Below, in pieces: positions 19,007-23,452 of a DNA stretch of 64,000 bases. Both the position numbers and the translations under genes were made by a program. Location: contig OZ059899.1 of the NCBI GenBank assembly GCA_964057225.1, positions 13,454,001-13,518,000 on the forward strand. The letters are read 5' to 3'. Every line of letters begins with the position of its first letter. The first letter of the stretch is position 1. This stretch comes from Auanema rhodensis (taxonomy: Eukaryota; Animalia; Nematoda). The notes under the pieces were generated by a model. That model made no database searches. It saw only the letters and a list, made by a program, of their open reading frames with translations, and was not told where the DNA came from.

Positions 19007-19521
19007 AAGAAACGCAAATTATGCAGTCCATTTGAGCATTTATTTGAAACTTGACGCGCTACTCTCTACATTTCTCTCTTTCTCTTCGGAAATTTTTATA
19101 ATTAACCTAGAATTTAGTAAAGCACAGAAAACTGCTTAGAAATTTATATGAATTGCTGCTTCTATTCTTTATATCGGAGAATATTTGATAGAAGTGCTGG
19201 TCACTAAGCTTCTTATAGAAAAATAAGAATTCAATTCTAGAAACTGATTAGATGTAAATAATGTGTACATAATATTATTCCAAAATAACTTTGGAATGTG
19301 GGTTAGATTGAAAATTTGGTTGTAAGACAACAATTGTATTGTATAGAAAATGTATTTAGTTCGTATATTGTATAAAATATAATTAAACTATGTTCTTATT
19401 CGTATTCTATCAATAAATCAATTGATATTAGTTTTAAGTTGATTGATATATTGTAGTAATTATCTTATCCTACTAGTAGTGTTCCCACGTCTTGTCTATA
19501 ATTTCGTAACTATGATTATAG

Positions 19522-21293
19522 ATGTGGGACATACTGATCTTGACTGCTGGTTCAAAAAAACAAAAGGATGATTTTGAAATCATTTTAGAAAATTTAAATT
19601 TAACTAAATATACTAATATAGTTCGTGTTTATGCTGATGATCCACCTGGTGTACGGATAGGTTGTTATAAGCTGGATCAGGTGTATTTCATGTTAATTCT
19701 AGGATCGGGGGGCTGTATGTTTTATATTACCAAATCTTTAGCAGATGAGTTTGGAGAAGGACTCGAAAGAAAAAAAGTAACCAAGTGTGCTAACTGATGT
19801 TATATAAAATGGTTTTCTAGATACTGCTCATTCATTCTGGTGGTTGGTCTCAACGCATGCCCCATCTTTCTTGTTTCGGAAAAATCTTTGCTCATTTACC
19901 AGGAGGTAAAACAGTATTAGAACTAAAGCTTGAAACATATAAGTAATAATATTTTGATCACATTCGTTAATACGAAAGGAATTCAGACGTTTTCCGAAAA
20001 TCCTTCGCCCTGGCATAATGGTCGCCGCATCTGACGTCATCGAAGATACATCAAATTTTATTGGAGAAGATAAAAAAGCCGATATGTTATTATTCGCTAA
20101 TCATTCTCATATAGATGTAATTCATTCTTTTATCTTTACGTTTTATCTCATATTCAAAGGATTATAGACAGCTACCCAGCATGGCGTGTTCATCCTTGAT
20201 CACTATGGCAAATTACAAACAGTTCTACAAAAACCAAGTAAGGCTGAAATAATAGAAAAGAAGGCTTTGCAACCTGATGGATTGGTGTTAACAGACTGGT
20301 TAAAATTCAAATTTAGCTTTTTTAAATTATTATTATTTATTAGTTTTTATTGGATATCTTGGAATATTAGTACTAAATTATCTGAACTGTATAGTGAGAA
20401 TTTGAAGGATGAGATTTGTTGCTATGGAGATTTCATGCGACCATTAGGCCAAACTCCTGACCTTCGATATTTAGAAGAAGGTTCGAGAATAACAGACTAT
20501 TAAATCGATTGAATAAAACAAAAGCTTCAGGACAAGATACTTTAAGATATTGGCGTAAGAAATTAGCGAATGTGTTCTCCGCTACTACGGTTGAAGTAAC
20601 TTTCACCAGATGAACATATATTAATAATTGGAAATATATTTAGATAATCGACTTGGGTTCTGAAAGCTTTTTTCATTTAGGTACAGTTAGTGAATTCCTG
20701 GAGCATATACATGAAAAATCTGTATTTGCAAAGAAATTTAACATAAAACACGGAACTGTTTATAGTAACATCGAAAATTGCACGGTTAGTTAGTTATCAA
20801 TTCAAAAAATGAAAAATTGTTAAGATTCGAAAAAATAGCTACATTGAATACTGTAACATTACTAGCATACAAGTAAGCTCGAACTGCATACTGAGTGGAC
20901 TTCAAGCAGGAGATGGAATGCATATTCCGGAAAATTCAATAATATTTACAATTTGCACAAATAGTGGATATGTTACATTCTTCTTCCACACACATGATGA
21001 TATTAAGAAAAAACAAGAAAAACTCTTGTGGATGAAAAAAGATACTGGTTTAAGAAATTGCTCCCTTTGGGATGCAGCTATATTTCCCATCCAAGACAGC
21101 AGGCAATTATCGTTAAATGCTACACTTAGTATGTTGTCATTAGAAAGAGTAGAGGTAACAGAAAAATTATAAGTAACGATTAATAACCATATCATTTCAG
21201 GGGACTGGCGGAATTTCAGTTGCGCAGGCTATAGAAAATAAAAATCTATCAGAAATGGAACGATACCGGCATCAATTAAGACTCCTGCGTTGA
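19522..21293 (+). CDS. Fucose-1-phosphate guanylyltransferase (FPGT, L-fucokinase-family domain)
   Basis: WDILILTA, DPPGVRIGSGG, ILLIHSGGWSQRMPHLSCFGKIF, PGIMVAASD, HGVFILD, LQKPS, EICCYGDFMRPLG, FFHLGTVSEFL, SLWDAAIFP. Stop TGA at 21291-21293. Confidence 0.88.
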
Positions 21294-21652
21294 AAGTTTC
21301 TTCACCATCAGCCTCTGATGGAGTGATCTTGAACGATATCCCACTTTTGATGAAACTGGAGAATTCTCTTCGTTCTCAAGATTAGGATTCGATCCATTTC
21401 CATCACTGTAAAATGTTTTATAAAAATGTATATGCCTGAGAGAACTTACTTGTCAATTCTTATCGGAGTTCTATCGTAATCAAATGTTGGAGAACGGGGA
21501 TCACTTTCAAGAAACTTTAAAACAATTGTAAAATATAATTTCATGATATCAATTCTTACCACATCAGAAGGTGTTTTAGGAATATCTTCATCTGATAAAA
21601 TTGAACATTGTGTATTATTGAAATTATTGGTGGCAGAGAAGACTTGTCCCAT
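21276..21652 (-). CDS. 95-aa CDCA3/Tome-1-like microprotein (exons 21652-21560, 21514-21450, 21405-21276)
   Basis: MGQVFSATNNFNNTQCSILSDEDIPKTPSDV|FLESDPRSPTFDYDRTPIRID|NDGNGSNPNLENEENSPVSSKVGYRSRSLHQRLMVKKLSTQES*. Strong GTAAG donors, 45 and 44 nt introns, TTTTAG acceptor 6 nt before the ATG. Confidence 0.7.
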
Positions 21653-21976
21653 AATACACTAAAATAATAGAACTTACATAATCAAATTCAGCAAGCATAA
21701 AAAAGACAAAAGCAATGTTTACAATACAGGACAAACAGGGTCAGAAAACCGCAACCCGAAAGCATGACCCTGCCAAAAGCAAAGCGGTATCGAATTTAAA
21801 TCTAGCGCGCGTCGTACTAGCGTCATTTGGAGTATCGTTGGAAAAAAATGATGCTGTCTCCTCTAAAGTTTGTTTATATTGGCTTTAATGATATATTTCA
21901 TTAGCATAATATTAATATTTCTTATTTTTAATTTTTGATTCATATTCGTTTTTTAATTTTTTGTAATTTTATGTAG

Positions 21977-23452
21977 ATGTCAAAAAGAGCCGTATCTTTC
22001 GCGGAGAGTATTGAAACTCGCACATTTGAAAAGCCTTTAGAACCTCTAGAGGAGTTTGATCTTCCTGAAACTGAACGTAAAGAAGAATCTGATACTGAGG
22101 TTCTTGTTCAAAATTGCCTCCGGTTTATAGAACTTTTATTAGTTTGATGAAGATGGCATCCCTATTAAAAAAGCTAAAAAGCACACACTTGATAGTGATG
22201 AAGAAGAGGAAGAGGATCACAAACGACTTGACATGAAAAAAGTAGAGAATTTAAATTTTGCATATATATTTTTTTAATAATTTAGGTTGAAGGTCAGGAA
22301 GATGGTGCTATGGACTTTGATGGTAATACGAAGATCACTGCTTTCAATATGAAAGAGGAAGAAGAGGAAGGTCATTTTGATGCTGATGGTAATTTTATAT
22401 TTGATAAAAAGGGGAAGGTATTTCATATTCTTTCATTCAATTGTTAATTTTTTTTTATTAGGATATCAAGGATGAATGGCTTGATAACATTGATTGGGCC
22501 GCCATAAAAAAGAAGGCAGGAGAGCATTGGCAAGTTGAGAATGAGGTTTGTATTTTAAGTGGTATTATAAATCTCATTTTCTAACAATGTGAGTCAGCTT
22601 TTTCACTATGTTTGCATTGTAAGGTGTATATTTTGTGTTCTATAGTCCCTATCTTTATTTTAATTTTATTTGTTTTCTGACTGACTTGACTTTAGGATGC
22701 TGAAGTTAGCTTACCTGCTTTGAATGATAGCAGAAGAAAGGAAATTTATGCGAAACTGATCGAAATCTTGAAACCTGGTCAGACTGTCGCTCAAGCTCTT
22801 GTAGCTATTAAAAAGAAAAAAGGTTTTTTTTATTTTTATATATATTTAAATAATTATTTATGTCCAAATAGGCTTATCGGCAGCCGAAGAAAGAAAGTTG
22901 CGCTGGGCAGCCAAAAAGGCAGGAAAAGCTGTTGAAGATTCCAGTGATCAAAAGGAAGCTAAAGACTTAAGTGCTTTAGCGGATGAACTTCTTTCCGCTG
23001 GACAGGTTTGCGTGTTATATCTGTACAAAGTTTAGAATCAGTTCTTAGATGGAAGCGTACGAGTGGCCTCGTGAACGCATACAGACCATGCTTCAAAAGC
23101 TTGATAATAACGCTGTTGATTCTTTGGATATGTTTTCAGATGCTCCAGGTTCGTATATGTTGGTGTATCGTATATTATTTGAATTTTTAGCCAGTACATC
23201 TGCTAATGCTAATGATGATAAAGAAGAAGATGATGAAGTCAAATGGGAGTATAAAGAAGATAATGACGCTGAGATACAGGTTCGTTCAACATTCTTTTTT
23301 TTTATTTATCTTATTCTTAGGGACCTTTCACATCAGCTGAAATGCTGGAAAAGCAAGAAAAAGGTGATCTTGGCGGAAATGGAGTTGCTAGACGAGTTGG
23401 CAGTGGCGACTTCAACCCAGTTCGCCGTATCGACTTTGATCTTTACGTTTAA
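21977..23452 (+). CDS. teg-1: CD2BP2 / U5-52K / Lin1 homolog with C-terminal GYF-type domain
   Basis: KHTLDSDEE, ITAFNMKEEEEEGHFDADGNFIF, DEWLDNIDW, LKPGQTVAQAL, LDMFSD, VKWEYK...GPFTS...RRIDFDLYV*. Confidence 0.92.

What the first reader, a model, noticed from the sequence alone, without database searches (positions are those of the whole stretch)
21276..21652. Hidden antisense microprotein with a CDCA3/Tome-1 signature and N-myristoylation motif
Seen: a clean 3-exon minus-strand gene (95 aa) between FPGT and teg-1, starting MGQVFS (MGxxxS myristoylation consensus), containing SDPRSPTFDYDRTPIR and four S/T-P CDK-type sites. Known: vertebrate CDCA3/Tome-1, a mitotic-entry regulator linked to Wee1 degradation, begins MGSAKS and carries DPRSPxxxxxRTP repeats (SDPRSPTLGIARTPMK, from recall). 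Inference: a minimal, single-repeat nematode CDCA3-like cell-cycle protein that annotation could easily miss. I do not know of a characterised nematode member. No canonical KEN box is present (ENEEN only).
Basis: partly seen in the sequence, partly recalled or inferred. Interest (0 to 1): 0.75.

Follow-up and report, generated by a model that had tools for sequence, protein, structure and literature searches.

The report
Minimal nematode CDCA3-like myristoylated microprotein gene
A real, conserved three-exon gene for a 95-residue disordered protein that keeps only the N-terminal core (lipid-anchor signal plus one DPRSP…RTP motif) of the animal cell-cycle protein CDCA3/Tome-1, and whose promoter carries a cell-cycle (CDE/CHR-like) element.

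Summary
Three minus-strand exons (21652-21560, 21514-21450, 21405-21276), joined by GT..AG introns of 45 and 44 nt, encode 95 aa. The protein starts MGQVFS, contains SDPRSPTFDYDRTPIR and has four S/T-P sites.

The gene is real. A 99-aa orthologue in Auanema sp. JU1783 has the same intron positions and the same neighbours (GYF/teg-1-like, fucose pyrophosphorylase). dN/dS is 0.16. About 15 other nematodes carry orthologues, all named "hypothetical".

The CDCA3 link is supported.
- Profile searches hit MG-starting proteins with 2-6 DPRSP..RTP repeats, some named CDCA3 by NCBI or UniRef (Lingula, scorpion, springtail, a fish).
- Profile-profile comparison gives 98.6% probability (E 1.3e-15) from the MG start through the first motif.
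- All the characterised CDCA3 parts (KEN box, D-box, ABBA-like and F-box-like regions) are absent, so the Wee1/SCF function cannot be transferred.
- Nematodes instead have a conserved C-terminal helix, RxRSLHQRLMxKK.

A CDE/CHR-like element (CGCGC-N4-TTYRAA) lies 145-300 nt upstream of the start codon in four species. This suggests DREAM-type cell-cycle transcription, as reported for mouse Cdca3.

The gene is not antisense to anything. It is a new minimal variant of a known family, of moderate interest.

The parts
21560..21652 (-). Exon 1 (31 codons): start codon, MGQVFSA N-myristoylation consensus (21632-21652), conserved PKTP site
   Evidence: aligned to Auanema P0001 residues 1-31; intron at the same position in Auanema
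21515..21559 (-). Intron 1, 45 nt, GT..AG, phase 0. It is in frame and stop-free, so a 68-aa ORF reads through it.
   Evidence: the BLASTP gap against P0001 falls exactly here
21450..21514 (-). Exon 2 (21 codons + 2 nt) carrying the DPRSPTFDYDRTPI motif (21461-21502)
   Evidence: matches the fish CDCA3 and Lingula CDCA3 motifs
21406..21449 (-). Intron 2, 44 nt, GTAAGT..ACAG, phase 2. Position and phase are conserved in Auanema and C. angaria.
21276..21405 (-). Exon 3: ENEENSP (KEN-like relic column), conserved RSRSLHQRLMVKK helix motif (21297-21335), stop at 21276-21278
   Evidence: (73% identity to P0001); AlphaFold helix at residues 85-98 of P0001
21795..21809 (-). CDE/CHR-like tandem promoter element CGCGC-TAGA-TTTAAA, about 145 nt upstream of the ATG
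   Evidence: the aligned Auanema site is CGCGG-CAGG-TTCGAA; similar sites upstream of the C. angaria and Pristionchus orthologues
21700..21850 (-). Conserved non-coding promoter/5' block, >80% identical to Auanema while synonymous sites differ at 64%
   Evidence: single copy in the genome; no Rfam match
21659..21665 (-). TTTTAG acceptor-like site 6 nt before the ATG (possible SL trans-splice site; inference only)
   Evidence: TTTTCAG at the same place in Auanema; TTGCAG in Pristionchus
21216..21275 (-). Conserved first 60-75 nt of the 3' UTR
   Evidence: about 85% identity to Auanema, then the identity decays

Best explanation
This is a genuine single-copy protein-coding gene. It is the nematode orthologue group of the N-terminal module of CDCA3/Tome-1. 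The 95-aa product is almost wholly disordered. Three features are shown or predicted by the sequence data. (1) A Met-Gly start fits the N-myristoyltransferase consensus (G2, S6), and the Gly is nearly invariant across the family. (2) There is one copy of the pan-metazoan DPRSPTxx-hydrophobic-xRTP-hydrophobic motif, 25-45 residues from the N-terminus, as in CDCA3-like proteins. (3) A nematode-specific C-terminal motif, RxR[ST]LHQ[RK]-hydrophobic..KK, is predicted to be a helix. The following is inferred. The protein is a lipid-anchored, phospho-regulated adaptor made in dividing cells. A CDE/CHR-like element in its promoter would give DREAM/MuvB-type late cell-cycle transcription. Proline-directed kinases (CDK/MAPK class) would phosphorylate the conserved SP/TP sites. 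The DPRSP..RTP motif would dock a conserved partner that is still unidentified. A CTD-small-phosphatase-type enzyme is one candidate, because the PxSP core resembles the substrate of CTDSP1 and CDCA3 has been reported as a CTDSP1 substrate. The C-terminal basic helix would provide a second contact, either to the membrane or to a partner. Because KEN, D-box, ABBA-like and F-box-like regions are absent, degradation by APC/C-Cdh1 and SCF-mediated Wee1 turnover are not inferred.
For: Gene reality: exon translations and GT-AG introns. Collinear 99-aa Auanema orthologue with the same synteny and intron positions. dN/dS 0.16, with codon-position differences 20/15/47. Orthologues in about 15 nematodes. 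Intron 2 position and phase are shared with C. angaria. Intronless transcript-like contigs of a strongylid orthologue occur in five sequencing runs. The gene is single copy in its own genome. Homology to CDCA3; hhalign 98.6%, E 1.3e-15 over 51 columns from MG through the first motif; Atlas rank 3 is a chordate CDCA3 cluster; direct motif matches to fish and Lingula CDCA3; nearly all family members start MG, with the first motif at residues 20-60. Disorder plus a C-terminal helix. Promoter: a CGCG-N5-6-TTYRAA site is the only match in 20 kb of the Auanema locus and in 14 kb of the Pristionchus locus, and one of two in the 64-kb window. Each lies upstream of the orthologue's ATG, as does one of four matches in the C. 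angaria locus. There the upstream neighbour ends 211 nt before the ATG on the same strand, so the promoter serves this gene alone. TTTGAA, TTTAAA and TTCGAA are the three commonest CHRs, a CDE lies 4 nt upstream of a CHR, and mouse Cdca3/Tome1 is CHR-regulated (PMC4176359). C. elegans LIN-54 targets carry a related hybrid E2F/LIN-54 motif (PMC3093354). CDCA3 has been reported as a CTDSP1 substrate (PMC7281111).
Against: There are no expression, splicing, translation or lipidation data for this species. Similarity to CDCA3 is confined to about 55 residues dominated by one short linear motif. No Pfam or PDB family covers it. The KEN box is absent. The motif's binding partner is unknown, and the phosphatase idea rests only on a review statement and a resemblance I recall. 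I wrote the promoter pattern after seeing the sequences, so its statistics are optimistic. In this window the promoter is shared with teg-1. No C. elegans orthologue turned up. Spirurid orthologues have Q/E/G rather than S at position 6, which weakens the myristoylation consensus there.
Confidence: 0.8

Rival explanations
1. The gene is real, but the resemblance to CDCA3 is convergent. A short proline-directed phospho-motif next to a myristoylated N-terminus would have arisen independently in nematodes, so the protein is not a CDCA3 relative.
For: The shared region is short and disordered and is dominated by a 14-residue motif. hhalign aligned only 51 columns. The C-terminal halves share nothing alignable, and nematodes have their own RxRSLHQ helix.
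Against: Eight fixed residues in a fixed 5-residue spacing, together with an MG start, a preceding TP and the same distance from the N-terminus, recur across nematodes, arthropods, brachiopods, annelids and fish. A 194-aa tick protein bridges the two forms: MGQFVS start, two motifs, SLQKKVAKKR, C-terminal KEN. One nematode-type sequence (P0041) has KEN at the column where the window has EEN. The promoter logic is shared with mouse Cdca3 (PMC4176359).
Confidence: 0.08
2. It is a full functional equivalent of Tome-1: an SCF-associated trigger of mitotic entry that promotes Wee1 degradation and is itself destroyed by APC/C-Cdh1 in G1.
For: Family membership of the N-terminal module. A cell-cycle-type promoter element. 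The published role of vertebrate CDCA3 (PMC8163776 introduction).
Against: The degrons mapped in human CDCA3 (D-box at R198, ABBA-like at 220-231, KEN at K258; PMC8163776) lie in the C-terminal part that nematodes lack. The window protein has no KEN and no RxxL. Nothing resembling an F-box was detected.
Confidence: 0.1
3. It is a chance ORF or non-coding transcript, and the conservation reflects overlapping regulatory DNA of teg-1 or FPGT.
For: The flanking non-coding DNA is itself strongly conserved. The gene is tiny and lies in a 750-nt spacer.
Against: Substitutions are concentrated at third codon positions and dN/dS is 0.16. The reading frame, intron phases and protein motifs are kept in distant nematodes with different neighbours.
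Confidence: 0.01

Closest known systems
Vertebrate CDCA3 / Tome-1 (trigger of mitotic entry 1)
   Same: MG start with an NMT-type consensus. DPRSPxxxxxRTP motif with the first copy about 30 residues from the N-terminus. Intrinsic disorder. A CHR-type cell-cycle promoter element, reported for mouse Cdca3 (PMC4176359) and found here as a CDE/CHR-like site.
   Different: 95 aa instead of about 190-270. One motif instead of two. No KEN box, D-box, ABBA-like motif or F-box-like region. A nematode-specific C-terminal RxRSLHQRLMxKK helix. No evidence of a link to Wee1, Skp1 or Cdh1.
Invertebrate CDCA3-like proteins (Lingula XP_013390490, Centruroides, Orchesella; tick 194-aa proteins; insect 400-540-aa 'hypothetical' proteins)
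   Same: Same N-terminal module. The tick proteins also start MGQ[FY][VL]S and carry a basic SLQKK stretch resembling the nematode C-terminal motif.
   Different: They have 2-6 motif copies and usually a C-terminal KEN (or, in insects, QCENTPP...WDxDxTLxI). The nematode proteins are truncated to a single motif.
Nematode orthologue group (Auanema sp. JU1783 unnamed 99 aa; Pristionchus GMT21233.1; Haemonchus, Necator, Nippostrongylus, Heterorhabditis, Litomosoides, C. angaria, C. bovis and others)
   Same: Same architecture and length. For Auanema, the same introns and neighbours. All are unnamed ('hypothetical' or 'uncharacterized').
   Different: The window and Auanema proteins lack the STPK that follows the motif in most other nematodes. 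Several database models have wrong N-termini (H. polygyrus, Cooperia, P. pacificus, C. bovis).

Membership tests
CDCA3/Tome-1 family | N-terminal Met-Gly fitting the N-myristoylation consensus | tested here: met
   MGQVFSA. G2 is nearly invariant in 16 aligned rows (15 nematode-type proteins), and most of the 180 collected relatives start MG. The modification itself was not tested.
CDCA3/Tome-1 family | DPRSP-x5-RTP motif, first copy near the N-terminus | tested here: met
   One copy at residues 36-48. It matches both fish CDCA3 copies and three Lingula copies. Vertebrates have two copies.
CDCA3/Tome-1 family | Statistically significant sequence/profile similarity to proteins named CDCA3 | tested here: met
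   E 5.6e-6 to Lingula CDCA3 among 1.84 billion proteins. Scorpion 5.9e-8, springtail 2.4e-5, fish 0.011. hhalign 98.6%, E 1.3e-15. Human CDCA3 was deliberately not handled.
CDCA3/Tome-1 family | C-terminal KEN box (APC/C-Cdh1 degron) | tested here: not met
   No KEN in the 95 aa. ENEEN/DEN occupies a column where one nematode-type sequence (P0041) has KEN.
CDCA3/Tome-1 family | D-box (RxxL) and ABBA-like motif in the C-terminal half | tested here: not met
   No RxxL in the exon translations. The region homologous to human residues 193-267 (PMC8163776) is absent.
CDCA3/Tome-1 family | F-box-like region binding Skp1, and promotion of Wee1 degradation | not testable with these tools
   No Pfam F-box hit. 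Binding and function need experiments.
CDCA3/Tome-1 family | CHR-dependent late cell-cycle promoter | tested here: inconclusive
   The sequence element is present and positionally conserved in four species. Its function is untested, and I defined the pattern after inspecting the sequences.

The most novel reading that the evidence does not exclude
The DPRSPTxx-hydrophobic-xRTP-hydrophobic motif is an ancient metazoan docking/phospho-switch motif for one conserved, still unidentified partner. That module, and not the KEN/F-box part, is the ancestral core function of CDCA3. The nematode 95-aa protein would be its minimal natural carrier: a myristoyl-anchored, DREAM-regulated microprotein that sequesters or inhibits that partner (for example an SCP/CTDSP-type phosphatase) at membranes in dividing cells.
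Probability: 0.25. Interest if true: 0.7.

Novelty: new variant of a known kind. Interest (0 to 1): 0.5.

Why it matters
CDCA3/Tome-1 is widely used as a proliferation and cancer marker, but its biochemistry is poorly understood. Published work concentrates on the C-terminal degrons and a disputed SCF role, and the N-terminal half is treated as featureless disorder. Nematodes have kept only that N-terminal module under purifying selection, apparently with a cell-cycle promoter. This points to the myristoyl anchor plus the DPRSP..RTP motif as the conserved functional core. It also gives a 95-residue natural minimal version for finding the motif's partner. Finally, it names an orthologue group that is 'hypothetical' in every nematode genome seen here, including parasites and the genetic models Pristionchus and Auanema.

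Tried and rejected
- **Family and structure libraries.** Pfam on each exon and on the Auanema orthologue gave nothing. PDB sequences gave nothing.
- **Rfam on 21100-22100.** Only chance-level hits, and none on the conserved upstream block.
- **Word search with the Auanema protein alone.** It found only itself. Relatives appeared only with profiles.
- **First alignment with separate exon rows (A1).** It misplaced the end of exon 1 on the motif and was discarded. A2 used the in-frame 68-aa ORF instead.
- **Conserved upstream block as an upstream-ORF peptide.** Rejected: indels shift the frame between the two species, so the same bases are read in different frames.
- **Conserved upstream block as a structured RNA.** Weak: consensus fold -10.4 kcal/mol and one covarying pair.
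- **Conserved upstream block as a repeat.** Rejected: it is single copy in the genome.
- **Paralogues or a longer multi-repeat CDCA3 gene in the same genome.** None at E <= 10.
- **Literature.** No paper on the DPRSP motif, on nematode or Drosophila CDCA3 orthologues, or on CDCA3 N-myristoylation.
- **Earlier scan notes near this place.** None.
- **C. elegans orthologue.** None seen among the hits. Only C. bovis and C. angaria represent the genus. No nematode genome collection was available to check the syntenic locus.
- The joined-model search was omitted, and the full-length Auanema protein served as proxy.

Full report
**1. The observation**

Translating each exon by reference gives three pieces:
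- MGQVFSATNNFNNTQCSILSDEDIPKTPSDV (21652-21560)
- FLESDPRSPTFDYDRTPIRID (21514-21452, plus AA at 21451-21450)
- DGNGSNPNLENEENSPVSSKVGYRSRSLHQRLMVKKLSTQES and stop (21404-21276), after T at 21405 completes an AAT codon

Both introns are GT..AG: 21559-21515 (45 nt) and 21449-21406 (44 nt). These are typical nematode lengths. The product is 95 aa with four S/T-P sites (T27, S39, T47, S68) and no KEN.

Intron 1 is in frame and stop-free, so the ORF list shows a 68-aa ORF at 21446-21652. I used this ORF as a by-reference query. That step was left out.

The gene is not antisense to anything. The fucose pyrophosphorylase gene on the + strand ends at 21172 (PF07959 hits on its exons). The + strand gene starting MSKRAVS begins at 21977.

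**2. Is it a gene?**

The 68-aa ORF found one protein among 5.8 billion, a 99-aa 'unnamed protein product' of Auanema sp. JU1783 (P0001).
- It is collinear with all three exons, and the alignment gap falls exactly on intron 1. Exon 3 is 73% identical.
- Its locus (L001) has the same layout: GYF-domain gene head-to-head, fucose pyrophosphorylase tail-to-tail, then a DEAH helicase.
- Its two introns are at the same codons and in the same phases.

An exon-by-exon comparison gives pN 0.195 and pS 0.636, so dN/dS is about 0.16. There are 20, 15 and 47 differences at codon positions 1, 2 and 3. This is clear purifying selection on this frame.

The window's own genome (181 Mb, 112 contigs) has only this one copy. 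No protein from the window's own genome appeared in the collection. Either the assembly is unannotated there or the gene was missed.

**3. The nematode family**

A profile of the short relatives (A4) retrieved 128 proteins. They include orthologues of 79-142 aa from Pristionchus, Haemonchus, Trichostrongylus, Nippostrongylus, Cooperia, Necator, Heterorhabditis, Cylicocyclus, Ostertagia, Ancylostoma, Heligmosomoides, Gnathostoma, Gongylonema, Litomosoides, Acrobeloides, Caenorhabditis bovis and C. angaria. Every one is 'hypothetical', 'unnamed' or 'uncharacterized'.

The alignment (A5) gives the consensus MGQ[WFY][LF]S ... TP ... [I]DPRSPTxxIxRTPIEVxSTPK ... [DE]NSP ... RxR[ST]LHQ[RK][IL]..[KR].

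Further points on orthology and expression:
- In C. angaria the gene has the same phase-2 intron eight codons after RTP. It lies next to the same fucose pyrophosphorylase and DEAH helicase block.
- In Pristionchus fissidentatus the neighbours differ.
- Five Logan run assemblies carry an uninterrupted coding sequence for a strongylid orthologue (P0010). In two of them it sits beside an uninterrupted GYF gene. In intron-rich strongylids this most likely means spliced mRNA, so the gene is expressed in a relative. I could not verify the library type.
- No C. elegans protein appeared.

**4. The CDCA3 question**

Pfam and PDB sequence searches were blank.

HMMER with a profile of P0001 plus the window pieces (A2), run against 1.84 billion representatives, gave 46 hits at E <= 1e-3.
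- Apart from three short nematode-type proteins, these are proteins of 84-538 aa. Nearly all start MG and carry 2-6 copies of DPRSP[ST]xx[IF]xRTP[IL].
[quoted passage not shown] It ends in DKEN.

The second profile search also hit three more named proteins:
[quoted passage not shown] - 'Cell division cycle associated 3' of the fish Acanthochromis (0.011)

The fish protein begins MGSSESK and has two motifs. Exon 2 of the window matches both of them directly.

hhalign of the nematode alignment against a CDCA3-like alignment gives 98.6% probability and E 1.3e-15. It covers 51 columns, from the MG start through the preceding TP to the end of the first motif. Independently, the ESM Atlas placed a chordate 'Cell division cycle associated 3' cluster third of 7.7 million (score 0.87, which is a lead only). 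A nematode cluster ranked first.

A 194-aa tick protein looks like an intermediate form. It has an MGQFVS start, two motifs, SLQKKVAKKR and a C-terminal GKEN.

I conclude that the N-terminal module is homologous to that of CDCA3. I did not handle the human sequence.

**5. What is not shared**

The parts of human CDCA3 with assigned functions all lie in the C-terminal third: a D-box at R198, an ABBA-like stretch at 220-231 and KEN at K258. The N-terminal part is described only as disordered (PMC8163776).

The nematode proteins lack all of these. The window has ENEEN, and most nematodes have DEN or xEN, at a column where one nematode-type sequence (P0041) has KEN. This may be a relic of the KEN box.

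Nematodes instead have an invariant RxR[ST]LHQ motif. AlphaFold on A5 gives pTM 0.20 and disorder throughout, except for a confident helix at residues 85-98 of P0001, LHQRLMVKK.... The Atlas model is also disordered. The invariant S/T with R at -3 is a basophilic-kinase-type site (inference).

**6. Promoter**

Synonymous sites between the window and Auanema are near saturation. Even so, about 150 nt of the spacer (21700-21850) is more than 80% identical. The first roughly 75 nt of the 3' UTR is about 85% identical.

Inside the upstream block, the two species have CGCGC-TAGA-TTTAAA (21809-21795) and CGCGG-CAGG-TTCGAA, aligned with each other. Each lies about 145 nt before the ATG. This is the arrangement of a CDE/CHR tandem element.
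- PMC4176359 states that a G/C-rich CDE lies four nucleotides upstream of the CHR.
- It states that TTTGAA, TTTAAA and TTCGAA are the three commonest functional CHRs.
- It states that Cdca3 (Tome1) is a CHR-controlled gene.
- PMC3093354 reports a related hybrid E2F/LIN-54 motif at C. elegans DRM targets.

The pattern CGCG-N5-6-TTYRAA gave these counts:

| Source | Matches | Expected by chance |
|---|---|---|
| 64-kb window | 2 | 0.57 |
| Auanema locus, 20 kb | 1 | 0.19 |
| Pristionchus locus, 14 kb | 1 | 0.32 |
| C. angaria locus, 12 kb | 4 | 0.53 |

In each source, one match lies upstream of this gene's start codon. The sites are at -145 nt in the window and in Auanema, -143 nt in C. angaria (with the canonical TTTGAA) and about -300 nt in Pristionchus. 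In C. angaria the upstream neighbour is a same-strand gene that ends 211 nt before the ATG. The element there can hardly belong to teg-1.

I wrote the pattern after seeing the sites, so the statistics are optimistic. Function is untested.

**7. Mechanism**

*Shown:* a conserved, selected, single-copy gene; homology of the N-terminal module to CDCA3; predicted disorder plus a C-terminal helix; and a conserved CDE/CHR-like site.

*Inferred:* N-myristoylation; proline-directed phosphorylation of the four conserved S/T-P sites; docking of a conserved partner on the DPRSP..RTP motif; and late cell-cycle transcription through DREAM/MuvB. One candidate partner class is the CTD small phosphatases. CDCA3 is listed as a CTDSP1 substrate (PMC7281111), and the P-x-S-P core resembles the Pol II CTD site as I recall it. 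This is speculative.

A role in Wee1 degradation is not supported.

**8. Verdict**

The gene is a minimal nematode variant of the CDCA3 family. It is unnamed in all databases seen, though orthologues are annotated in many species. Its value is that it isolates the conserved core of a poorly understood cell-cycle protein.

Noticed in passing
window 21700-21850 (and L001 9800-9950): Beyond the CDE/CHR-like site, the whole ~150-nt spacer block is >80% identical between the window and Auanema, although synonymous sites differ at 64%. It includes the exact runs ACGATACTCCAAATGACG and GCTTTGCTTTTGGCA. There is no Rfam hit, no conserved upstream ORF and only a weak fold. The block is single copy. What else it encodes is unexplained.
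   Followed up: partly
window 21216-21275 (L001 10388-10450): The first 60-75 nt after the stop codon are about 85% identical to Auanema (for example GTTCCATTTCT and GCCTGCGCAACTGA). This suggests a conserved 3' UTR regulatory element. In the window this stretch may also overlap the FPGT 3' UTR on the other strand.
   Followed up: no
window 19043-19058 (-): This is the only other CGCG-N5-6-TTYRAA match in the 64-kb window (CGCGTCAAGTTTCAAA). It lies in the spacer upstream of the fucose pyrophosphorylase gene.
   Followed up: no
L010 8194-8208, 9622-9636, 9866-9880 (C. angaria): Three further CDE/CHR-like matches lie around the fucose pyrophosphorylase gene (4 in 12 kb against 0.53 expected). 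Two of them are the identical CGCGGAATTTTCAAA on opposite strands.
   Followed up: no
P0079, P0069, P0070, P0106 (database proteins): Several annotated nematode orthologues have wrong N-termini. Heligmosomoides polygyrus P0079 shares only the C-terminal half with the transcript-derived P0010. The P. pacificus and Cooperia models start upstream of the MG. C. bovis starts MNQ.
   Followed up: partly
L004 and L005 (Logan contigs, SRR15275151 / SRR15275137): Single ~1.8-kb contigs carry uninterrupted GYF-gene and small-gene coding sequences head to head, with start codons about 130 nt apart. This suggests overlapping divergent transcripts from a shared promoter in a strongylid.
   Followed up: no
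P0003-P0008, P0011, P0013, P0019, P0023-P0028, P0044-P0046 (insect proteins): Insects have a 300-540-aa unnamed family. It has an MG start, 2-4 DPRSP..RTP motifs, a KLHNKNLDN stretch and a conserved C-terminus KLKVSDKPRK...QCENTPP...WDxDxTLxI. It appears to be the insect form of CDCA3, with CEN in place of KEN.
   Followed up: no
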